Shown: positions 989 through 64,000 of the stretch, piece by piece | How positions within the stretch are numbered: position 1 is the stretch's first letter | How the letters are laid out: every line of letters starts with the position of its first letter | Source of the DNA: Laetmonice hystrix | Taxonomy: Eukaryota | NCBI GenBank assembly: GCA_965235115.1 | Contig: OZ249451.1 | Coordinates: 12,214,001 to 12,278,000 of the forward strand | Reading direction: 5' to 3' | Length of the DNA stretch: 64,000 nucleotides | Notes under the pieces: generated by a model | Databases searched by the model: none | What the model saw: the letters and a program-made list of their open reading frames with translations, nothing else | What the model was told of the DNA's origin: nothing | Program-made: the position numbers and the translations under genes

Positions 989-3676
989 ATGGCGTCCAGT
1001 ATTTCGACGAATGCTCTAACCGACAAGACTGTCCTCTACAAGTACCTGTCTCTGGACCAGCCCGAGGACAAGGTCCAAGTCATGTATGTCTGGATCGACG
1101 GTTCCGGGGAACAGCTCCGGTCGAAGACAAGGACGCTGGACGCGGAGCCTCTCTGCCCGCAGGGTGAGCGTGGGCCACAATAGAAAGCTGGAACTTACAA
1201 TTTAACCTTTAGAGCCACCCACACTGTCTAGTTCGTTACAAAGTATTTCATAAAAACGCATTTCAGCCTTAAACATTTTATGACCTTAGACATAAACTTG
1301 AGGAATGAAGACATGCAAACTTTAGGCTTCAAAATTTAAGGCATTTCACCTTCCAAACTTTAGGACTTTAGCTGTACAAACTTTGGAACTCTAGACGGCC
1401 AAACATTGGAACTTTAGGCTTCCAAAATTAAGGTGTTTCGCCTTCCAACTTCAGGACTTTAGCCTTCAACCCCTTAGAACGTTAGAGTGACTTTTGCTAT
1501 CCTAATTTTACGACGTTAATTAGCCTTGCAAACATTAGGAGATCAGAAGTCCGAACTTTAGAACAGACGCTTTCCAAACTTTAGGGTTCCATGCAGCCTT
1601 CAAACCGGGATCATATTTAGCAGTCTCTGTCCACCTCAGATTGTCCCATCTGGAACTTTGATGGATCAAGTACGGGTCAGGCCGACGGTAAGAACTCGGA
1701 CGTTTACCTGAAACCGGTGGCCATCTTCAAGGACCCCTTCCGATTGGGCAAAAACAAACTCGTCCTTTGTGAATGTCTCGATCATGAGAGGAAGCCTGTT
1801 GGTAAGATATTCCCGGAATTGTGTAGTGTTGGCGGATACTGTATCCTTGTACTATAATAAAATCAAGCAACGAAAACAAGGTATTCGACACTGGTGGGAG
1901 ACATTGTCGAAGATTGGGCTCTAAAATGGAAACATGCCCGTGCATTTAAAAAGAAAAATCGCTCACTCACTCTCAGTCATGGCGCCAGGAAAACGCCGAA
2001 CACTAGGACAACTTCCGTTCCAGATTCCAATTTCCGGTACAAGTGCATGGTTGCTATGAATGAAGCTGCGCATGCGCACCCGTGGTTCGGTATCGAGCAG
2101 GAGTACACGTTACTGGACCAGGACAACCGGCCGTTTGGATGGCCCAAAAATGGTTTCCCAGGACCTCAGGGTACGTTAGCCGGGAGACCGGATGTTACCC
2201 CCTCCCCTCCACAAATGGCATCCTTGTCAAGAAATGTATTACTGATTTAGGGCGCGTGTGATTACATTAACTGTTGCGAGGTAGTATACAGTCAGATCTC
2301 GGTAATTCGCTGACTTATTTTAATCTGATCTTAAAGCGACTCCAGAATGACCCTTGTTTTTGAACCCTAGAAATCTATAACAACCTTTGCTGTCTGACCC
2401 GGGATCATGCTGTTGGACCCCATCATATTAATTTATCCCCAGGTCGGTACCACTCTGCGGTAGGCGCCAACAAGGTGTACGGTCGGGCCATCGCCGAGGG
2501 TCACTATCGGACGTGTATGTATGCCGGGATAACCATCGGTGGCACCAACGCCGAGACCATGCCAGCTCAGGTACGGGTCAAGGTCAAGGGCACAGCACAA
2601 GGTCACGTGAAGGGCAATCTTAGGTTCTGGCTACAATCAGTAGTGGGAGTTTCACTATTTCTAACGACCTATCCGTTCTGTTTCAGTGGGAGTTTCACTA
2701 TTTCTAACGACCCCTCAGTTCCGTTTCAGTGGGAGTTTCACTATTCCTAACTAGTCCTCCGTTCCGTTTCAGTGGGAGTTCCAAGTTGGGCCATGTGAGG
2801 GGATAGAGATGGGAGACCAACTCTGGATGGCCCGGTACCTACTCCATCGAGTGGCCGAGGATTTCGGCGTGATCGTTTCCTTCGATCCCAAACCCATGCC
2901 TGGAGACTGGAACGGTGCGGGAGCTCACACCAACTACTCAACCAAGGAGATGAGAGAGGAGGGCGGCATAAAGTGAGTCGAAACATCACCTGGTGGCTTT
3001 GTGGTGTACTAGGGAGTTGAAACAGTTCACGGGATCAACAACAGGGTCTCCTTTAAGGTACAATGTGGGCGACAAAAGTGTCGACCAGTCGGGAGAATTT
3101 GTCGCCCATGTAGGGAAAGATTGAATGACGAGACAAGACGTGTCAATATGTATCTATTAACAAATTAACATTGACTACATTCTGCCTTCACCGGTAACGG
3201 TAGGACAGGATGTACGGAAGTCGGTCAGTTTGTATTGTATATTCTCGGGGACACCAAACTGGGTATCTATTGGTCAGTTTTAATCTCCGTTTATTGACTT
3301 CCGGTTCAGACACATTGAGGAAGCCATTGAGAAGCTCCGCAAACGTCACACCCTCCACCTCTACTACTACGATCCAAAAGGAGGCAAAGACAACGAGCGC
3401 CGTCTGACGGGACTTCACGAAACTAGCAGTATGACGGACTTCTCGGCAGGGGTCGCTAACCGCGGGGCAAGCATCCGTATCCCACGGCCGGTCGGGGAGG
3501 AGGGCAAGGGGTACCTGGAGGACCGGAGACCGGCTTCTAACTGTGATCCCTACCGGGTGACAGAGATCATCGTCCGGTCGACCGTCCTTGGCGAGACCTC
3601 ACTCTTCCCAGAAACAGGCGAGCTAGGCCTAAAAGAGAACATCCCCGTTTCAAAAGTCTGTATCAACGAGGAATAA
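989..3676 (+). CDS. GLUL: Glutamine synthetase II, copy 1 (392 aa, 6 coding exons; variant active-site loop)
   Basis: Exons 989-1163, 1640-1801, 2024-2170, 2443-2570, 2773-2972, 3310-3676. All are GT-AG and phase-compatible, total 1179 nt. GSII motifs: [88 protein letters not shown]. Confidence 0.96.
1310..1600. repeat. Degenerate AACTTTAGG/CTTCCAAA minisatellite in GS intron 1 (paralogous tract about 6390-6700)
   Basis: Recurrent CCTTCCAAACTTTAGG-like units in both GS copies. Confidence 0.6.
2641..2780 (+). repeat. 43-bp tandem repeat containing the GS exon 5 acceptor
   Basis: AG|TGGGAGTT recurs with AG ending at 2643, 2686, 2729 and 2772. CTAAC and a pyrimidine tract precede the last three AGs. 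The paralogous array is at 7991-8089. Confidence 0.9.
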
Positions 3677-48648: not shown

Positions 48649-48820
48649 ACAGCGAGCGCGGGAGACAAGAAGAAATATGGAATCGACGCCAAGAATACTA
48701 CCTACAAACCTGGCGGGGGCAATGTGAAGATTTTTGAACAGAAAATGGAAGTGAAAAAAGTAGGATCGCGAATTGATGCCAAACATTCGCCTCGAAAGTC
48801 GGGAGAGTCGCCGAGAGTGC
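48649..48820 (+). CDS. Tau/MAP2-like gene: exon with atypical repeat (GIDAKNTTYKPGGGNVKIFEQKMEVKKVGSRID)
   Basis: Acceptor TCTCTTACAG, donor GTAAGT at 48821, phase 0 to 1; PGGG and KVGS motifs. Confidence 0.85.
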
Positions 48821-53445: not shown

Positions 53446-53535
53446 ATTGAAAGTCGGAAGTTAGACTGGAAGGTGGAGTCCCGCGTTGGGTCGATGAATA
53501 ATGCCACTCACAAACCTGGAGGTGGAGAGAAGAAG
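53446..53535 (+). CDS. Tubulin-binding repeat exon 3 (IESRKLDWKVESRVGSMNNATHKPGGGEKK)
   Basis: 90 nt, phase 0-0, AG/GT. Confidence 0.93.
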
Positions 53536-54340
53536 GTAACAGTTGAGACACTGGGTTCCTGACCCACCTTTAGTCTCACACACCTGTAGAATCGTACACA
53601 CCTGTACGTTCCTAGACTCTACATATCAGAGTTTGACAAACTCTCCATGAGGAGGATTTTAGTAATAGGGGAAACATTGATGATATTATGAAGTAGGTCT
53701 AACCAGTGACGGGTGCCTCCAGTGGAAATTAAGTGATTCCAAATTTCCCAGTGCTGAGATGCCTCGGTATATGACGTCATGGTAACTGATGTGTATTGTA
53801 AATGCTCCCCATGCTCCCGGACGATTAACACGCATGCCCAAGAAAATCCCCGTGTTGCAGTAGTTGGTAGAGACTGCCATCTGGTGTTGGCACTCGGAAC
53901 TACCTATTTTCCACCAACCCAAATCTGGCGACCAGGTGTTGTATATAGTGAGGGAAATTATGCTAATGTGGCTACATAAATGTGTCGCAAACATTTTCGT
54001 TATTTCCAGATTTATCTGCTATCCGACGATCGGAAATTAACGAAAAACTACTTAGCGAAATCCAAACAGAGAATTAGTGAGAGTTTAAACCCACCAATTA
54101 AGCCACACCCCTGACAATAACAAACGGCCCCACACTTATTTTTCGCAGTAACCACGCACTGTTTCCCCAAGTCCACATGGTCACAGAGCTACAATAATTT
54201 CCATAGATTTCACCTCAGTAATATTCCACTCTCCTGTTCTCCGACTTCTCTCTCTGGATTTGTCTCGTTGTGCCACCAGACGGCGCTGATGGTACTAATT
54301 CCTGTTTGTTCTCTGTGTTTACATTCTACCCAATGTACAG

Positions 54341-54430
54341 ATTGAGTCGCAGAAATTGGACTGGAAGGCCGAGTCCCGTATTGGTTCACTAAACAATGCC
54401 CAGTATAAACCTGGAGGCGGGGCGAAAAAG
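54341..54430 (+). CDS. Tubulin-binding repeat exon 4 (IESQKLDWKAESRIGSLNNAQYKPGGGAKK)
   Basis: 90 nt, phase 0-0, AG/GT. Confidence 0.93.
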
Positions 54431-54910
54431 GTGAGGCAAGAATCGAAACACGGGATCCCATTGGTCAGCTGGTGGAAAGTAGGTCAGCCTTGGTGGCGGC
54501 TAACATCAAAGGAAAATTGTCTCGGTCGGTTTATAATGGTATTGAGGGCAATACAATTATTTCAGGTTAGAAGGGCTCCTTTCTTTAAGAGAATAATTTC
54601 TATCAGTTCAAAAGGGCACCTGCTTGTCAAAAATACACTTTTTGCTGAATTACTGGAGGTTTTTTTTAAAAAGATTCTACAACTTCAGACTTGGTTGTTT
54701 TGAGGTTTTAAAAACAGCATCAAGATTGTGTTTAGAATGACATGGTAGGCCTACAATGTGTATTGTGAGGAATGTTAAATGAAAGAGAGTGAACTGTCAG
54801 CGCTTGTTAGAGGAGAAGGTAGTGTATCAACTGTAACAATCTTGACGCGGTATCATGCCATGACAATGAGACGTAACAACGTGACGTGACAGTTTTCCCA
54901 GACATTAATG

Positions 54911-55030
54911 TCTAAAACAAAATTTATTTTGTCTGAGACAAAATTTATTTTGTCCGAGACAAAAATTATTTTGTCTGAGACAAAAATTATTTTTGCCTCG
55001 GACAAAATAAATTTTGTCTCAGACAAAATT
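54911..55030. repeat. 20-bp repeat array that inverts (fold-back)
   Basis: AAATTTATTTTGTC[T/C]GAGAC units followed by their reverse complement TCGGACAAAATAAATTTTGTCTCAGACAAAATT. Confidence 0.8.
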
Positions 55031-55322
55031 ACTTCAATTTTCGCTTCCTTAACACTCGTCTAAACAACAGGTGTCGCCAGTAAGTGTTCATTTATCTCGC
55101 TCCAACCGTGACGTGGGGATAAATCCACGAGATCCAGGTGACCACGTGACCGGCCAACTTCTGTACCTTACTCTCCTCTCTCTCCTTTTACAGGGGATAT
55201 CGTAGGAGCCGCTTCTTGAACACATATCACCTTTTGTATCAAACTTGGCTCTGCATCTATTCAATTTAACCTGGATATCAAGATCAGTGAATTAATATTT
55301 TGCATGTCTGTTTTGATGACAG

Positions 55323-55412
55323 ATCGAGAGCCGTAAACTAGAGTGGAATGTAGAGTCAAAAGTTGGGTCTCTAGAAAAAGCGGATTATAAACCCGGAGGT
55401 GGCGATAAAAAG
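55323..55412 (+). CDS. Tubulin-binding repeat exon 5 (IESRKLEWNVESKVGSLEKADYKPGGGDKK)
   Basis: 90 nt, phase 0-0, AG/GT. Confidence 0.93.
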
Positions 55413-57098
55413 GTATCAGTCCTCATGCAGAATGCCTTGTCGTAGTTTCCATTACTCTGCCCCAACTGTTTCTCACCTTTTTCTGCGTCATGAACTAGTT
55501 TGATTGTTTTATATTCTACTCAGTAAATAATTGTAATGATTTTCTATCTGAATAAACATTTACCCATGATTAGGAATGATACAATATCACATGCCTGATT
55601 CTGCATGACGCACATTTAAAGTATTTCTTCGATCTAAAAAATAATAAAAAGGATAAATATGGTGCATAATAAATCTCTGTAGGCCGCTGCTAATGTAATA
55701 TTGTACTGTGAGTGGAAGTACAATTTACATTTATCAGCTTTACAGAAGATAACATCTGCATTAGTGGTATAGAAACGCTTATAGTATTTCTATAAATGCT
55801 AATAGTGGTATCTCAGAACCTTTCTATCCCTTAGTGGTAATTATGTATCCCTCTAGCTGTTGTTGGTAACCGGCCGGTCAATCTATACGTTATTAGTTGC
55901 GTCATTCAGTAGTGAAAAAGTGCCCCCTCTCCCATCTCTCTCTTTGAGATTACCAGTTACTTGTACAGATCTTGCATTTGGGTAGTTAGTATATTTTCAT
56001 ACGTTCCTGTCGTCTTTGATGTCGATGTAGATTTTGCAGTATTTATCGAGTGTACCTCGTTGTCCTGATTTCCATTTAAATAGTATATATTGTTAAGTAT
56101 AAAATTTGTAGGGGTCTTATTTCTTAAGTCGTTATTACTTGACCATAGCTGTGTTAGTCAATTATTATCATAATTACGTCATTCTATCATGATGAATTGA
56201 GAGCGTGATGCATTTACCTGCTAAGGCCAGGGATTCGCTGTTGTCCACATTTAACATCTGCCAAGTAAGGTTGGCCTAGTAGACATGTTGCTGTTACTAT
56301 AATATTTGATGTAATTGGTAATGCCACAATTTAATACAAGTGCATGGCTGCATCGGAAAGACTTAGATTCGAAGAGCCGTGTACATGTAATAGTAGATGA
56401 GCTTGTGAATATCAGGGTCATCATGACACCACGTGAGATGACGTCACATTACAGTAACCTCACATTGCGTCACATTAGGATGACGTCACATTTCGTCACA
56501 TTACGGAAGCCTATAGTGTACCACAATGGTGAAGCTCTCACACACTGAATGAAATCGCCCAGACGAGGTCACCCTATATAGCCAACATACTTTGGCTACA
56601 TGAGGTGACCTCGGCAAGGCTTGCCTGGCTGCAGTTAGACTGATATTCATTGCCTTTACGGCGGAATATCTGTAGAGTAGGTGAATGACACCACACCTCT
56701 GAATTTTTTATAGACCTACTGATACATAACCTAATAGGGCCAGCCAAAAAAAACGCTCCCATAAGTTTGATGATGGAATGATAATGTGGCTACTTCTAGT
56801 GATATTCAAGGTTAATGTGCAAATATGCCTCACTTCAGATTCTTAGGATATAATAGAGATTTGTTAATTTTCTTTCATTGCCATGTAATACATTTCAGTG
56901 CAATGAATTTACTGTAACCAGATAGAATGAAGGTTGCCACTTAGAATTCAACCATTGCAAATTTAATAATGCTGACAATTGTATTTTTACAGATTATTTT
57001 GATGATAATACATGTCGTGGATGGCAATAATAAATTGAGGGTTAATGATTTTCTCTAATGGGTGGCATTCTCTGTGTGTTTTCTGTGTTTGATGGCAG

Positions 57099-57188
57099 AT
57101 TGAGAGCCATAGGCTCGACTGGAATGTAGAATCCAAGGTCGGGTCACTAGAAAAAGCGGATCATAAACCTGGAGGTGGCGAAAAAAAG
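57099..57188 (+). CDS. Tubulin-binding repeat exon 6 (IESHRLDWNVESKVGSLEKADHKPGGGEKK)
   Basis: 90 nt, phase 0-0, AG/GT. Confidence 0.93.
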
Positions 57189-58227
57189 GTACCCGAGGTT
57201 GAGCATCTTATTCTCAACTTCCGCTCTTTCGTCTCCTTTCTGAGCATTATGTGAACCCTCGTGTTGTGAAAGTGATAGTCGAGCGCTGAGCGGGAGGACG
57301 GAGATGAAGTAAGGCACGAGCATGTAAGATAGAGTAGGCCTATTCCAGTTATCTTTGGGCCTTTTAACGCTGCAGCCTATGTTGTATACTGGTTTAGTGG
57401 TGTATTCTGAATTTATTTGTTTTACGAAGTCGGTAATCCGTTCAGAAACACAAACATGATCCGACTACCTGTGACAGGCTGTTATCGCAGCGGTAAACTT
57501 GCAAGAAAGGAATATCTCGGGAACTGAGCTTCAACTTAATCAGGAGGTTAATGAAACAGTTATTGTGGTCAAAGACACACACTAAGGCACAACCTCCAAC
57601 GATTCGATTTTTATTCCTCATTATAAGGTTCTGAATAACGAATGAAACTTTCTGCTTGCTATATTCTCAGATCGCAGTTGTTTCAATGATTTTGCCTTGG
57701 AGTTATTAAATTTCACACCAATTGTTGCGGAATGCTCTCTTTACGATGTCTTTAATTGTTTCACGTAAATCACAAAGTGTTCTTTTCGACGAATGTTGAA
57801 TTTTGATCACTCAGCCGCATAAATCTTGACCTAGAAGTGACCTCTAATTCCGCTTTGAATCTCACAGCAAATGATCTCAAACTTGAGACACAGTCCCATT
57901 CTTTTTGGACATGTGTGCAGTCAGTCCCAGTTTGCCGCCTTTAATATGAATGGCGGACAACAAAGCAAAATAGAAAAGGTAAAATAGATGTGGAGATGGA
58001 TACGCATGTAGTATGTGTCCCAGAATTAGTAGATGGTATTCTATTCTTCCAGGTTATTTCATCAAGTTGACAGAACTCGGTATTTGAGCTCCAAACATGA
58101 AGTTTTCCTTTCTTCACAGATCCTAGCTGTTACTCCTTCGTGCGGTTGTCTCTCTGTGCCCCTTTCGCAATTATTGCTCTATAATTCGGAATGAAAGTAC
58201 AACGTCATTTGTTTTGAATTGTAATAG

Positions 58228-58317
58228 ATCGAGAGTCACAAAGTTGGCTGGAACGCAACGTCTAGAGTCGGGTCTCTAGAAAAAGCGGATCACAAACCAG
58301 GTGGTGGTACAAAAAAG
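58228..58317 (+). CDS. Tubulin-binding repeat exon 7 (IESHKVGWNATSRVGSLEKADHKPGGGTKK)
   Basis: 90 nt, phase 0-0, AG/GT. Confidence 0.93.
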
Positions 58318-59524
58318 GTAGAGAACAACCTCTCTGTCCTTTCCTGATCCGGATTATGTAGTTCCTTGTTCTGTGTTACGATAGAACCCTGTTTGTTACT
58401 TCCTAAAACGTCGTTGAGTTGTGATGTCATGTTTTTGGTGTGTTTTTTTAACGAAAAATAAACGAAGACGTCTTAAATCATGGAAAATATACGAAACAAA
58501 CGAAAGGGTCTTAAAGACCAGGCTTTGGCCAGCTCTTAGAAACGAGTTGGGGAAAAAATCGGAAAGACAAATTTAACAAATTGTGCTTCCCAAGAAAAAA
58601 AAAGGTCGCTGACACTTCGGTATTGCGACGTCAAAAGTTCAGCTTCGAAAATCCCACGAAGGTTTCTCTTGCTCTATGTCTTGAACGACTCGTGGCTACA
58701 GTCCCATTGTCAGGGTAGATAGTTTACAACATCGACCATCACTGACTAGTATTCCTGGAACAACTGACGTACAGTACGCACTTCATTCATGGAATTCCAA
58801 TTGTGCGACTCTCCTGTCCCGTTTGAACCTTGCGGAGGCTGCCCTCCCTGGACAGTAGTGACAAGCTGTCAAACAGTCACTGCCTACTCGTTATCCACTA
58901 AATGTTTATGACCCAAGTAAGATGTTTCGTTCTCTGAGCCTCACTAGTTTCACATACGGTGTCATGGGTCATTTGCATGGGCGTCTCGATGATGTCATGG
59001 TTGTGTCTCGTTATAAACTAAGTCATGTTCTCTCGTTTTATCTCTTACAATATCACTGCACACCCTTGCATGTGGCACATTTTCAACATCATTGTTCCCT
59101 CCACCGACACCACTGGAAATGTTTACGTTTCCACATTGACATATTTGTATTTCAGGTACTGCACGAACAAAATAATGTTGTTTCCATGGTCTTGATTGCC
59201 TCGGTTGGTGTTGAGGACCTGTATTTTGAAGTAGTACACTAGTCTCTCACTTTGGTACCACGGTAAACGTTTCAAGTGAACCAAGAATGTAACTTATTAT
59301 TTATTCAAAAAGAGTACCTTTTCCAAAGAAAAAAACGGAAATACAAAGGAAAGTGTTGTCTTTGACCATAACCAGAGTGAGATTTAGTAGTGGCATTTCT
59401 AAGACTTCAAACTTCACGTTTTACCCCTGTTTTTAATCGCCATCTATAGACAAGTCGGAACTGCTCACTTCACTGTTACATCTTGGACGTAACCGTTGAC
59501 ATATTGTGTGTTTTGTTTGTTTAG

Positions 59525-59620
59525 ATCGAGAGCCACAAAGTTGCTTTCCGGGAAAAGGCGACCTCCAAGGTGGGATCAACCAAGAACCTCAAACACCAGG
59601 CTGGAGGAGGCACGAAGAAG
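59525..59620 (+). CDS. Tubulin-binding repeat exon 8 (IESHKVAFREKATSKVGSTKNLKHQAGGGTKK)
   Basis: 96 nt, phase 0-0, AG/GT. Confidence 0.93.
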
Positions 59621-59817
59621 GTAACGGCAAATGTTCCCCTTGGATCCTGACAGATCCGACCTGAAGCCGTGTATACAGGCCAAGAATCTGTCCATACGTA
59701 TACTTTGGAGTAAAGGATTAGATTCCGTGGGTCAGTGTGAGATTGTCTTAGGTTGTATGTATCAACAGTATCATTCATGGGATCAATCCCTGTGATGAAT
59801 TCATGAATCAATTCCAG

Positions 59818-59913
59818 ATTGAGACGCACAAGATCGAGTTCCGCGAGAAGGCCGCTCCCAAAGTTGGCTCCACGAAAAACCTTGACCACCAACCTGGAGG
59901 AGGAGATAAACAG
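59818..59913 (+). CDS. Tubulin-binding repeat exon 9 (IETHKIEFREKAAPKVGSTKNLDHQPGGGDKQ)
   Basis: 96 nt, phase 0-0, AG/GT. Confidence 0.93.
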
Positions 59914-60187
59914 GTAGGAGCCACTACTACTGCTCTCAGACACCAGGTGGCGCCACTGAGGGGGACCCTTGATGGCCCAAGTCGAGGTCTGGCCGTGACG
60001 TCACCAAAGGAGCGATAATAAAGGTTTATTCCGTCCAGAAACAATAGAATTATAAACAGCGTTTCTCGCCTAGTTGATGACGTGACGGCCCTGCTCTTAA
60101 CCCTCTCATGTGAGTGTCAGTTCAGCCATGTTTGATGTAGCCATTTAATGTGCATGACCCTAATGCCCTGTTTTGTTTGGCCCTTAG

Positions 60188-60283
60188 ATTGAGACTCACA
60201 AAGTGGACTTCCGTGACAAGGCCGAGCCTAAAGTTGGTTCGACCGCCAACTTGGAACACCAGGCCACTGGTGGCGACATCAAA
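60188..60283 (+). CDS. Tubulin-binding repeat exon 10 (IETHKVDFRDKAEPKVGSTANLEHQATGGDIK)
   Basis: 96 nt, phase 0-0, AG/GT. Confidence 0.92.
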
Positions 60284-62690: not shown

Positions 62691-62885
62691 CGTTAGAGCA
62701 CCAAGTCCAGCGTTGGAACACCAAGTCTAACGTTGTAGAACCAATTCTGACGTTGGAGCACCAAGTCTAACGTTGGAGAACCAATTGTGACGTTGGAGCA
62801 CCAAGTCTAACGTTGGAGAACCAATTGTGACGTTGGAACACAAAGTCCAGCGTTGGAGTACTAAGGCTAACGTTGGAGCACCAAT
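62691..62885. repeat. 20-bp minisatellite x10 with partial 40-bp alternation
   Basis: CGTTGGAGCACCAAGTCTAA alternates with CGTTGGAGAACCAATTGTGA. Confidence 0.9.
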
Positions 62886-63031
62886 GCCTGAATGTACGAG
62901 TGTAAACGCGGTTTGGGCCCATTAGTTCTCTTACAGGACGTCATCAGCCGTGAACTCATGCAGTTATCAAAAATATCGTCACTTGTCAACCTACAGAGGG
63001 CGTGATGATCATCTGTGCCGTGTAAAACTAG

Positions 63032-64000
63032 AATCGAACTGGAAGCGAAATGCTGAAGTGGAAGGCTGAGGCCCGGGTGAACACTTCCAACCAGCCGTAC
63101 CAGCCAGGTGGGGGGAAAGTCAGAATTACTGACGAGAAACTGAACTGGCAGGTGGAGGCACGTATAAATGCGAACAATCCTGGGTACAAACCTTCAGGGG
63201 GAAACGTTCGCATTACAAATGAAACACTAACATGGAAGAGATTGCCTAAGATCGACGCCCAGAATGAAGGTTACGTACCTCAGGGTGGGAACATCACCAT
63301 TACGGATGACAAGGTAAAATGGAGGTCAGAGTCTAAGGTTAAATCAATGGAAAATCGATATTACCAACCGAAAGGTGGACAGGTTAAGATTCTAAGTAAT
63401 CTCGTGAAGTGGAACGCAGACCCCAGAGTTGGGTCGCTCCAAAATGTCACCTGGAAATCTGAAGGGGGTCGAAAAAAAATCCCAGCGGAAAAACTAAGCT
63501 GGAAGGCTGAGTCGAAAATAGGATCAAGGGACAACATTGGCCATGTGGCTAAAGGTGGAGCAGTGAAAATACGTGACGAAAAACTGATGTGGAATCAGGC
63601 GTCTAAAGTTGGATCCCTAGAAAATGTTTCTTGGGTTCCACCAGGTGGCGCCAAAACAATAGAAACGCGGAAGATAGACTGGAAAAGCGTCTCAAAGGTC
63701 GGATCAAAGGACAATATTGGTCATGTCCCGAGAGGAGGTGAAATAAAAATCAAAAGTGAAACGTTATCATGGAGGAAAAGCGCGAGGATTGGGTCACTTG
63801 AAAATGTGACTTGGAAATCTCCAGGTGGTCATAAAAGGATTGAAACTCGGAAACTTCTTTGGAATGTTGAGGCAAAAGTCAGATCAAGAGACAATATTAG
63901 GCACAGACCTCAAGGGGGCGATGTCAAGATAGAAAGTCAGAGACAGAGATGGCAGAGGAAGTCAAAAGTTGGATCTCTGGAAAATGTAGGGTGGAACCCT
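63032..64000 (+). CDS. Uninterrupted frame encoding at least 10 complete tau-like repeats plus a partial one (runs off window)
   Basis: 323 stop-free codons after TAG at 63029-63031, first ATG at 63050. Example repeats: VKIRDEKLMWNQASKVGSLENVSWVPPGGA and KTIETRKIDWKSVSKVGSKDNIGHVPRGGE. Absent from the ORF track because there is no stop in the window. Confidence 0.92.

What the first reader, a model, noticed from the sequence alone, without database searches (positions are those of the whole stretch)
63032..64000. Intronless multi-repeat block with a 60-aa higher-order alternation (W-type/H-type repeats)
Seen: from the fifth repeat on, units strictly alternate between GSL[Q/E]NVxW (VTWKSEGG, VSWVPPGG, VTWKSPGG, VGWNP) and [G/R]S[R/K]DNIxH (IGHVAKGG, IGHVPRGG, IRHRPQGG). 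Every unit has a Trp in the KLxW position. The first three units lack KxGS (RVNTSN, RINANN, KIDAQN; the two complete ones are 29 aa) and resemble the first spliced repeat (GIDAKN at 48649), so the block repeats the order of the spliced array without introns. Inference: it arose either by intragenic dimer amplification or by retroposition of a repeat-domain mRNA. A two-repeat period could reflect alternate alpha/beta-tubulin contacts.
Basis: partly seen in the sequence, partly recalled or inferred. Interest (0 to 1): 0.75.

Follow-up and report, generated by a model that had tools for sequence, protein, structure and literature searches.

The report
Seventeen-repeat tau-like block inside tau gene
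Inside the last intron of this invertebrate's tau-like gene lies a real, long-conserved uninterrupted coding block of 17 microtubule-binding repeats in which tryptophan-type and histidine-type repeats alternate; a distant relative keeps a similar block at the same place, but no RNA data could show how it is expressed.

Summary
An open frame runs from 63032 to 64621 (window numbering continued), 530 codons, TAG at 64622. It encodes 17 tau-type repeats (Pfam PF00418, E 1.6e-113). Units 5-14 are five strict W-type/H-type pairs.

The alternation is also visible in the DNA: 58-61% identity at even lags, 48-50% at odd lags, and odd/even is the best of 126 partitions. A repeat tree separates the two classes. 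Synonymous sites are saturated and no shuffle stays open, so this is old, selected coding sequence.

New here:
- The gene's canonical last exon lies downstream at 71262, so the block sits in the last intron, next to a second intronless tau-repeat ORF (67793-70549).
- A distant species (locus L021) has the same order: giant repeat ORF, ORF-B orthologue, terminal exon. It also has W-type and H-type units.

Dimer amplification is supported. Retroposition has no hallmark. The alpha/beta-contact idea conflicts with published tau-microtubule structure.

The only sequencing runs found were DNA, so use as an alternative last exon (my choice) or as a nested gene is unresolved. Two of three runs carry a stop allele at codon 397.

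The parts
60188..60283 (+). Last one-repeat cassette exon of the tau-like gene before the block. It is phase 0-0 and ends ...GGDIK|gt.
   Evidence: Acceptor, donor and frame were read. The joined cassette exons give a canonical repeat domain.
63030..63031 (+). Candidate AG splice acceptor. It is the AG of the TAG that closes the frame upstream, and it would join in phase 0, the phase of all upstream cassette donors.
   Evidence: Pyrimidines number 11 of 20 upstream, within the 10-15 range of the cassette exons. The canonical terminal exon has 20 of 20. Use of this site is inferred, not shown.
63032..64000 (+). In-window part of the 530-codon open frame. It continues past the window end to 64621 in continued window numbering (G000:C21:12277032-12278621), with TAG at 64622-64624.

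Beyond the window lie:
- the rest of the W/H pairs, to 64324;
- units 15-17 (64325-64594);
- a frameshifted 18th unit (64595-64672);
- a G>A stop variant at 64222;
- ATTAAA at 64915;
- ORF-B (67793-70549);
- the canonical terminal exon (71262-71360).
   Evidence: The block is a single copy in the genome.
63050..63052 (+). First ATG of the frame, six codons in. This would be the start codon if the block is a gene of its own.
   Evidence: Inferred only.
63068..63424 (+). Units 1-4. Three are 'IDA-type' units without KxGS, carrying Tyr where tau has His, with 29-aa spacing. Unit 4 (KVKS, Tyr) is transitional.
   Evidence: In the tree, units 1-3 form a clade with the first spliced unit (48685) and with nine units of the other species, support 99/94.
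63425..64000 (+). In-window part of units 5-14, the five W-type/H-type pairs of 180 nt each. The array of pairs runs on to 64324 beyond the window.
48649..48759 (+). Exon of the spliced gene carrying the single non-KxGS 'IDA-type' unit (GIDAKN...Y.PGGG), which units 1-3 of the block resemble.
   Evidence: It groups with block units 1-3 in the tree.
53446..59913 (+). Span holding seven further phase 0-0 one-repeat cassette exons: 53446-53535, 54341-54430, 55323-55412, 57099-57188, 58228-58317, 59525-59620 and 59818-59913.
   Evidence: Splice sites and frames were read.

Best explanation
The block is genuine, long-maintained protein-coding sequence for an array of 17 tau/MAP2/MAP4-type microtubule-binding repeats.

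Origin. The array grew by tandem duplication. Its core of ten units is five copies of an ancient two-unit module:
- a W-type unit, in which Trp replaces the conserved His before the GG turn;
- an H-type unit, which keeps that His and resembles the GSKDNIxH type of tau repeat 2.

Both unit classes and a short H-W-H-W run occur in a distant species, so the module predates their split. Array size has since changed independently in each lineage.

Location. The block lies in the last intron of the tau-like gene, between the last cassette exon (60188-60283) and the canonical terminal exon (71262, continued numbering). It has its own stop codon and no good internal donor.

Expression (inferred, about even odds). 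I take it to be an alternative 3'-terminal coding exon. It would be entered at the phase-0 AG at 63030-63031, and would replace the short canonical tail by 17 extra repeats.

Function (inferred from the family). The array would lie along a protofilament with one repeat per tubulin dimer, covering roughly 17 dimers. On this reading the residue that enters the beta-tubulin Phe395/Phe399 cleft alternates. One is a pH-titratable His. The other is a non-titratable aromatic Trp.
For: Coding and selected:
- A 530-codon open frame. 0 of 20,000 shuffles stay open, and the other frames carry 18-41 stops.
- Between units dN is 0.3-0.5 while dS is above 1.2 or undefined. dN is below dS in 51 of the 52 measurable pairs.
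- Tandem Repeats Finder sees no DNA repeat, so the copies are old.
- PF00418 scores E 1.6e-113 with 13 matched stretches.

Dimer module:
- The lag pattern of identity.
- Odd/even is the best of 126 partitions, also outside the defining codons.
- In the tree, the five W units group with X03 and X21 of the other species (93/92). H units B06, B08, B12 and B14 group with X02 and X04, in a 19-row cluster (95/69, drawn unresolved) that also holds the IDA-type clade; B10 falls just outside it.

Conservation:
- L021 (ENA ERZ25767047) has a 1504-aa intronless repeat ORF, then the ORF-B orthologue P0128, then a terminal exon that also ends in NST.
- DNA similarity between the two species survives in the terminal exon and one 31-nt stretch inside the repeat ORFs.

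Position in the intron.

Exon-like 5' edge:
- The frame opens exactly at an AG in phase 0.
- It opens within two codons of the register at which every cassette exon starts.
- Its pyrimidine tract resembles those of the cassette exons.

Terminal character: its own stop codon, a decayed and frameshifted 18th unit just after it, no phase-0 donor scoring at least 8 of 9, and ATTAAA 293 nt downstream.

Role of the His position: 10.1101/486688. Repeat geometry: 10.1101/647016 and PMC6279373.
Against: - No RNA evidence of any kind. The three runs that hold the block are DNA, cover the introns evenly and show no joints.
- No protein in the two large libraries is more than 50% identical, so there is no transcript-derived model.
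- The acceptor is a TAG with a modest pyrimidine tract. An ATG six codons in would serve a separate gene equally well.
- Two of the three runs' contigs (one sample at most) carry a nonsense allele at codon 397. This shows that the last four units can be lost on some chromosomes, or that constraint is now relaxed.
- The 5' edge of the orthologous ORF could not be reached.
- Microtubule binding, its geometry and any pH effect are inferred from vertebrate tau, not tested.
Confidence: 0.5

Rival explanations
1. The block is a separate, intronless gene nested in the last intron of the tau-like gene. It would be transcribed from its own promoter and translated from the ATG at 63050. The product would be a 524-aa protein made only of repeats.
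For: - It has an ATG six codons into the frame with a purine at -3, its own stop, and a candidate poly(A) signal.
- Its neighbour ORF-B looks like a self-contained intronless MAP with its own acidic N-terminal region.
- Other organisms have contiguous all-repeat ORFs of 357-495 aa, namely P0001, P0003, P0037 and P0005. In genomic contigs these have no tau-like exons around them.
Against: - The Met starts of those ORFs come from ORF-style gene calling and prove nothing about start sites.
- The frame opens at an in-phase AG, in nearly the same register as the cassette exons.
- The same strand and the same order are kept across a deep divergence.
- No promoter evidence was sought or found.
Confidence: 0.33
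2. The block arose as a retrocopy of the repeat-domain mRNA of the tau-like gene. It was later exonised or became a gene.
For: - There are no introns.
- The coarse order, IDA-type units and then KxGS units, copies the order in the spliced gene.
- ORF-B beside it is also intronless and has a projection-domain-plus-repeats layout.
Against: - There is no poly(A) tract after the block, and the flanks, which were only read and not searched for direct repeats, showed no target-site duplication.
- Of the block's KxGS units, the W, H and B15/B17 units group apart from the spliced units; only B16 sits in an unresolved cluster with spliced S02 and S05-S07 and ORF-B unit O1.
- Two same-strand insertions of copies of the parent gene into that gene's own last intron would be needed.
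- The 5' edge coincides with an exon register, which fits local duplication with intron loss better.
- The age of the event (dS saturated) makes the hallmark tests weak either way.
Confidence: 0.12
3. The block is a decaying relic: a former exon or gene that is no longer used.
For: - Two of the three runs carry a nonsense allele at codon 397.
- The 18th unit is frameshifted.
- Units 15-17 have lost the pattern, and unit 17 has lost the linker Trp.
- There is no RNA support.
Against: - The reference haplotype keeps 530 codons open although its units have diverged to about 50-60% DNA identity.
- dN is well below dS.
- A counterpart is kept open for 1504 codons in a distant species, on both of its haplotype contigs.
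- Decay begins exactly after the stop codon, which is what a used reading frame predicts.
Confidence: 0.07
4. The two-repeat period exists because odd and even repeats contact alpha- and beta-tubulin alternately.
For: Older stoichiometry arguments assumed one repeat per tubulin monomer (cited in PMC6279373). The alternation itself is real.
Against: - The near-atomic tau model has each repeat extended across the intradimer and interdimer interfaces, with its anchor at the interdimer interface (summarised in 10.1101/647016 and PMC6279373).
- The conserved His of every repeat points into the same beta-tubulin cleft (10.1101/486688).
- The other species has different higher-order periods in the same array, with two-unit and four-unit patterns. 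This suggests the duplication unit rather than lattice geometry.
Confidence: 0.05

Closest known systems
Vertebrate tau / MAP2 / MAP4 microtubule-binding region
   Same: - The same Pfam repeat, PF00418.
- KxGS, the GG turn, and a hydrophobic pair in the linker (KLxW here, KLDL or KLDF in tau).
- The surrounding gene has one repeat per phase-0 exon, split after PGGGxK as in MAPT, and a terminal exon of the IETHKLTF type.
   Different: - 17 repeats in one uninterrupted frame, against 3-5 in separate exons.
- PGGG is reduced to GG in most units.
- The conserved His is replaced by Trp in five units and by Tyr in four.
- There is a strict two-unit period.
- The block has its own stop codon and lies inside the last intron.
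Multi-repeat MAP2/tau-like proteins of molluscs, brachiopods and echinoderms. Examples: Lytechinus pictus XP_063952560.1 with 13 repeats, Lingula anatina XP_013402001.1 with 11, Nucella lapillus KAL8559909.1 with 10, and the 10-repeat Crassostrea gigas protein in PMC8985376.
   Same: - They are the best sequence matches, at 42-50% identity.
- They have long arrays of 30-32-aa repeats, some with a linker Trp.
- Their isoforms differ by multiples of 30 aa.
   Different: - All their units keep His at the conserved position.
- Their repeats are mostly in single-repeat exons. The largest fused exon I found in Lytechinus holds three repeats.
- None shows a W/H alternation.
The 1504-aa intronless repeat ORF upstream of P0128 in ENA assembly ERZ25767047 (L021:1-3342; the other haplotype is L023)
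   Same: - The same position and strand relative to the ORF-B orthologue and the canonical terminal exon.
- The same order of unit classes: 29-aa IDA-type units and then KxGS units.
- It contains W-type units and GSKDNIxH units that group with those of the block.
   Different: - At least 32 units.
- W and H alternate only locally (X02-X05 and X19-X23). Elsewhere there are two-unit and four-unit periods of other kinds.
- It has a 170-aa basic non-repeat tail, absent here.
All-repeat ORFs P0001 and P0003 (unnamed, from Logan and ENA), and the chytrid tau-like proteins Spizellomyces punctatus XP_016612831.1 and Powellomyces hirtus TPX56737.1
   Same: - P0001 and P0003 are contiguous ORFs made almost wholly of 30-aa units with a linker Trp. 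They alternate between aromatic (Tyr) and His units.
- The chytrid proteins carry GSLENITWKPPGG-type units, close to the W-type units here.
   Different: - Identity is only 31-38%.
- The residues that follow the GG turn pair with the two classes the opposite way round, so their alternation is probably independent.
- The chytrid proteins have only two W units and no alternation.

Membership tests
Pfam PF00418 (Tau and MAP protein, tubulin-binding repeat) | A match above the curated gathering score of 27 bits | tested here: met
   370.6 bits, E 1.6e-113, with 13 matched stretches on the 530-aa frame. The window part alone scores 213.6 bits.
Tau/MAP2/MAP4 repeat | A KxGS motif in each repeat | tested here: inconclusive
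   12 of 17 units have [KR][VI]GS. Unit 10 has KVRS and unit 4 has KVKS. Units 1-3 lack the motif.
Tau/MAP2/MAP4 repeat | A conserved His two to four residues before the PGGG turn (His268, 299, 330 and 362 of tau) | tested here: not met
   His is present in 6 of 17 units. It is Trp in 5, Tyr in 4 and Arg in 2. GG is invariant, but full PGGG occurs in only 3 units.
Tau/MAP2/MAP4 gene architecture | One repeat per exon, phase 0, split after PGGGxK; a projection domain upstream; a terminal exon encoding the IETHKLTF-type pseudo-repeat | tested here: not met
   The surrounding gene meets this: eight cassette exons of 90-96 nt and a terminal exon at 71262. The block itself does not, being one 1590-nt frame with its own stop.
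Tau/MAP2/MAP4 function | Binds along microtubule protofilaments and stabilises them | not testable with these tools
   Inferred from homology only.
Higher-order tandem repeat formed by amplification of a two-unit module | Units at even distance are more alike than units at odd distance, beyond the few class-defining residues, and the two classes separate in a tree | tested here: met
   Identity is 58-61% at even lags and 48-50% at odd lags. Odd/even ranks 1 of 126 partitions, also without codons 5-10 and in the linker half. It is not significant at third positions outside the core, ranking 47 of 126. Tree groups are given.
Processed retrocopy | A poly(A) tract at the 3' end, flanking target-site duplications, and collinearity with the parent mRNA | tested here: not met
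   There is no A-tract, and none was noticed when the flanks were read (no repeat search was run). Only the coarse class order is shared, and no block unit pairs with a particular spliced unit; only the IDA class and the unresolved B16 cluster mix the two. The age of the event (dS saturated) weakens this test.
Alternative last exon of the host gene | A transcript junction from an upstream donor to the block's acceptor, and a cleavage site after its stop | not testable with these tools
   No RNA run was found, and the three runs that hold the block are DNA. Only the sequence signals could be read.

The most novel reading that the evidence does not exclude
The block and its much larger counterpart in the other species may define an undescribed class of tau-repeat proteins. 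Their features would be very long arrays (17 to more than 32 repeats) encoded without introns, kept inside the last intron of the canonical tau-like gene, and built on a two-repeat Trp/His module.

Such an array would bind a protofilament with a 16-nm (two-dimer) period. It would mix constitutive aromatic anchors with pH-sensitive His anchors. This could be a ruler-like or exceptionally stable lattice binder, for example on long-lived axonal or ciliary microtubules.
Probability: 0.15. Interest if true: 0.7.

Novelty: new variant of a known kind. Interest (0 to 1): 0.5.

Why it matters
Tau-family proteins are studied almost entirely through vertebrate proteins with three to five repeats.

This is a natural array with 17 repeats, and its relative has more than 32. 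In it the His that senses pH and enters the beta-tubulin cleft is replaced, in every second repeat, by Trp.

That makes it a ready-made natural experiment on three questions:
- what the His does;
- how many repeats engage the lattice at once;
- whether long arrays bind with a super-period.

The locus also shows three tau-repeat coding units packed into one gene: cassette exons, the block and ORF-B. This is a useful case for studying how repeat arrays grow, through exon duplication versus in-exon duplication, and how alternative 3' ends or nested genes arise.

None of this bears on disease directly. Without RNA data the block's use remains open.

Tried and rejected
- RNA evidence. The look-up of sequencing runs returned three runs of one sample. 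Read laying showed them to be DNA, with even cover of introns and no joints, so transcription and the 60283-to-63032 junction could not be tested.
- Close homologues. No protein above 50% identity was found among 5.8 billion clusters or 1.84 billion representatives. No annotated or transcript-derived model of this gene could be used.
- A third homology search, using the L021 ORF as query, did not return that ORF itself or any other long block.
- The 5' end of the orthologous ORF lies outside both fetched loci. The locus of the nearer ORF-B orthologue P0007 has a 670-aa ORF upstream, but no DNA was served for it.
- Exon maps of annotated relatives. Isoforms P0008 and P0124 are not on record. 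Only Lytechinus could be mapped.
- Tandem Repeats Finder finds nothing in the block because the copies are too diverged.
- I looked for a homologue of the L021 basic tail downstream of the block's stop, to test for a recent truncation. None was found.
- An internal-exon reading was rejected: no phase-0 donor scores at least 8 of 9 matches to the consensus inside the block.
- The Kellogg 2018 tau-microtubule paper is not held. I cite papers that summarise it.
- A literature search for tau-like proteins of annelids and molluscs gave nothing relevant beyond PMC8985376.
- Structure and complex prediction were not run. The protein is expected to be disordered, and a tubulin trimer plus the array exceeds the size limit.
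Those features are now described in the text of the in-window parts.

Full report
**What is there.**

The window ends inside it. I located the window at G000:C21:12214001-12278000 and fetched the continuation. Coordinates above 64000 below are window numbering continued.

The frame runs for 530 codons to 64621, with TAG at 64622. It is a single copy in the 627-Mb genome. Pfam PF00418, the tau and MAP tubulin-binding repeat, matches at E 1.6e-113 with 13 stretches.

Anchoring on the invariant GG gives 17 units:
- Units 1-3 lack KxGS (RVNTSN, RINANN, KIDAQN), have Tyr where tau has His, and are spaced 29 aa apart.
- Unit 4 is transitional.
- Units 5-14 alternate strictly between GSL[EQD]N[VM]xW and GS[KRT]xNIxH, giving five pairs.
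- Units 15-17 do not alternate.
- A Trp in the linker (KLxW) is present in the leading partial unit and in units 1-16.

**Is it more than chance, and is it coding?**

- None of 20,000 shuffles of the block keeps the frame open, with a mean of 32 stops. The other five frames hold 18-41 stops.
- Between units, nonsynonymous distance is 0.3-0.5. Synonymous distance is above 1.2 or cannot be computed. dN is below dS in 51 of the 52 measurable pairs.
- Tandem Repeats Finder sees no repeat in the DNA.

The copies are therefore old, and the frame has been held open through long divergence. Contigs of three DNA runs from one sample cover the block continuously, so the assembly is sound.

**The alternation.**

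- DNA identity among units 5-14 is 58-61% at lags 2, 4 and 6, against 48-50% at odd lags.
- Of all 126 ways to split the ten units five and five, odd/even gives the largest same-class excess. This holds on all sites, after removing the six class-defining codons, and in the linker half alone. At third positions outside the core the signal is lost, ranking 47 of 126, as expected at saturation.
- I built a maximum-likelihood tree of 63 units: the block, the spliced gene, ORF-B and the other species. With only 30 columns it is low in resolution. It places the five W units in one group with two W units of the other species (93/92). H units B06, B08, B12 and B14 group with X02 and X04. The non-KxGS units of all three sources form a clade (99/94).

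**The surrounding gene.**

Upstream lie eight phase 0-0 cassette exons of 90-96 nt, one repeat each, between 53446 and 60283. They are split after GGxKK, as in MAPT.

A pattern search found the missing canonical terminal exon at 71262. It reads IESHKLDFREKAAARTQHG...NST and then stops. A 20-of-20 pyrimidine tract precedes it. Joined without the block, these exons give a complete conventional tau-like repeat domain.

The block therefore lies in the last intron. A second long open frame lies there too. This is ORF-B (67793-70549, 919 codons from its first ATG), which has an acidic N-terminal part and three or four tau repeats. It also has about thirteen copies of a 9-aa unit and a conserved C-terminal motif.

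**Conservation.**

ORF-B has orthologues P0007 (45% identity) and P0128. The genomic locus of P0128 (L021, ENA ERZ25767047) shows the same arrangement on one strand:
- a 1504-aa intronless repeat ORF, of which I hold the last 1113 aa, scoring PF00418 E 5.5e-175;
- 6.6 kb further on, P0128;
- 3.6 kb after that, a terminal exon reading IETHKVDFRDKAQARTKHG...NST and then stop.

The second haplotype contig has the same layout.

That ORF begins, within the part I hold, with nine 29-aa non-KxGS units, followed by 23 KxGS units. Six of those have Trp at the His position. X02-X05 read H, W, H-class, W, and X19-X23 read W, H, W, Y, W. Elsewhere it has other two-unit and four-unit periods, and it ends in a 170-aa basic tail that has no counterpart here.

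The two species share DNA similarity only in the terminal exon (71% over 105 nt) and one 31-nt stretch inside the repeat ORFs. The conserved arrangement is therefore not due to recent common ancestry.

I conclude that the block, its two unit classes and its place in the intron are ancestral to both species, and that the array has expanded and contracted separately in each.

**How it is used.**

This could not be tested. The only runs holding the block are DNA, and no library protein is close enough to be a transcript model. The sequence signals are as follows.

- The frame opens exactly at an AG (63030-63031) in phase 0, the phase of every upstream donor. It opens within two codons of the register at which the cassette exons start.
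- Its pyrimidine tract (11 of 20) is like those of the cassette exons (10-15).
- There is no good phase-0 donor inside the block. It has its own stop. An 18th unit immediately after the stop is frameshifted and decayed. ATTAAA follows 293 nt later.
- There is also an ATG six codons in.

I favour an alternative last exon at about 0.5, over a nested gene at about 0.33. A relic is unlikely, given the open frame here and in the other species.

It cannot be dismissed, however. Contigs of two of the three runs read A at 64222, which turns the linker Trp codon of unit 13 (codon 397) into TGA. The sequenced material therefore carries a truncating allele that would remove units 14-17.

**Origin.**

Tandem duplication of a two-unit module is supported, as set out above. 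Retroposition is not:
- no A-tract follows the block, and reading the flanks showed no flanking direct repeats (not formally searched);
- no KxGS unit of the block pairs with a spliced unit; most (the W, H and B15/B17 units) group apart from them, while B16 is unresolved among S02, S05-S07 and O1.

The event is too old for these tests to be decisive, and the shared coarse order (non-KxGS units first) is real. An edge that sits on an exon register fits local duplication with loss of introns, or growth within an exon, somewhat better.

Contiguous multi-repeat coding is not unique:
- a three-repeat exon in Lytechinus;
- a fully intronless 11-repeat tau-like ORF, P0006;
- all-repeat ORFs P0003 and P0005.

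**Comparison with known proteins.**

Among 287 related proteins gathered from the searches, the block has the most units in one frame. It is the only one with a W/H alternation. P0001 and P0003 alternate Tyr and His, and two chytrid proteins carry W-type units.

The published survey reports up to ten repeats in molluscs (PMC8985376). Current databases already hold 11-13-repeat proteins.

**Mechanism, inferred.**

- In tau, the His before PGGG enters a cleft formed by beta-tubulin Phe395 and Phe399 near the interdimer interface. It makes binding pH-dependent, and Lys or Ala there weaken binding (10.1101/486688).
- Each repeat is extended along the protofilament and anchored at the interdimer interface (10.1101/647016, PMC6279373).
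- Hydrophobic linker residues such as Leu282 and Leu284 face tubulin (10.1101/647016). The linker Leu and Trp of KLxW align with them.

On that model a two-repeat period equals two tubulin dimers, not alternating alpha and beta contacts. An array in which Trp and His alternate would combine fixed aromatic anchors with titratable ones. This is an inference from vertebrate tau and needs the experiments listed under next steps.

**Organism.**

The best matches to the block are spiralian (gastropods, brachiopod, nemertean, scallop) and echinoderm proteins. Earlier notes of this scan call the genome annelid-like. I did not test that.

**Verdict.**

This is a real and old coding feature, and a new variant of a known family. 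Its higher-order repeat structure is well supported, and its nested, conserved position had not been noticed before. Its mode of expression and its function remain open.

Noticed in passing
67793-70549 (+), window numbering continued (L002:4793-7549): ORF-B is a 919-codon intronless frame in the same intron. It has an acidic N-terminal region and three or four tau repeats, one with the motif LPKWKKE. It also has about thirteen tandem copies of a 9-aa unit (PPGVREHRS) and a conserved C-terminal motif (GPRxIRExTYDV). Its orthologues P0007 and P0128 are unnamed, and P0005 looks related. It appears to be an undescribed tau-repeat protein family.
   Followed up: partly
71262-71360 (+), continued numbering (L002:8262-8360): The canonical terminal exon of the tau-like gene lies 11 kb after the last cassette exon. 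The gene's last intron therefore holds two large tau-repeat ORFs on the same strand.
   Followed up: yes
64222, continued numbering (L003:4722): A G>A variant makes codon 397 of the block a stop (TGG to TGA). It is present in the contigs of two of the three DNA runs of the one sample.
   Followed up: partly
64595-64672 (+), continued numbering (L002:1595-1672): A decayed 18th repeat. It starts in frame (KVGSLE), loses a codon and shifts frame just before the TAG. It then reads VPVDGAVKIKEVK in another frame, resembling unit 17.
   Followed up: partly
62700-62880 and about 65440-66000 (continued numbering): Two different minisatellites flank the block, with periods of about 40 nt and about 48 nt. 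The second is over-represented in the runs' contigs at its edge, where depth rises in the last bin.
   Followed up: no
63391 (L003:3891): In run X1 only, a short contig leaves the block in unit 4 and continues with 30 letters matching a cassette-exon sequence (ESKVGSLEKA type). It is probably a graph or read chimera between repeat copies. The other two runs do not show it.
   Followed up: no
L021:1-3342 and L023:1-1912 (ENA ERZ25767047): The orthologous repeat ORF of another species has 1504-1505 codons and at least 32 repeats. Its higher-order periods include KLGS...GGGNVxIEN alternating with [KR]IGS...GGGSKQIED, and a Y-Y-H-H pattern.
   Followed up: partly
59993-60022 (L003:493-525): A roughly 30-nt stretch in the intron after exon 59818-59913 has contig depth of 2,000-3,000 against about 35-60 around it. 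It is joined to many other contigs, so it is a short, highly repeated element.
   Followed up: no
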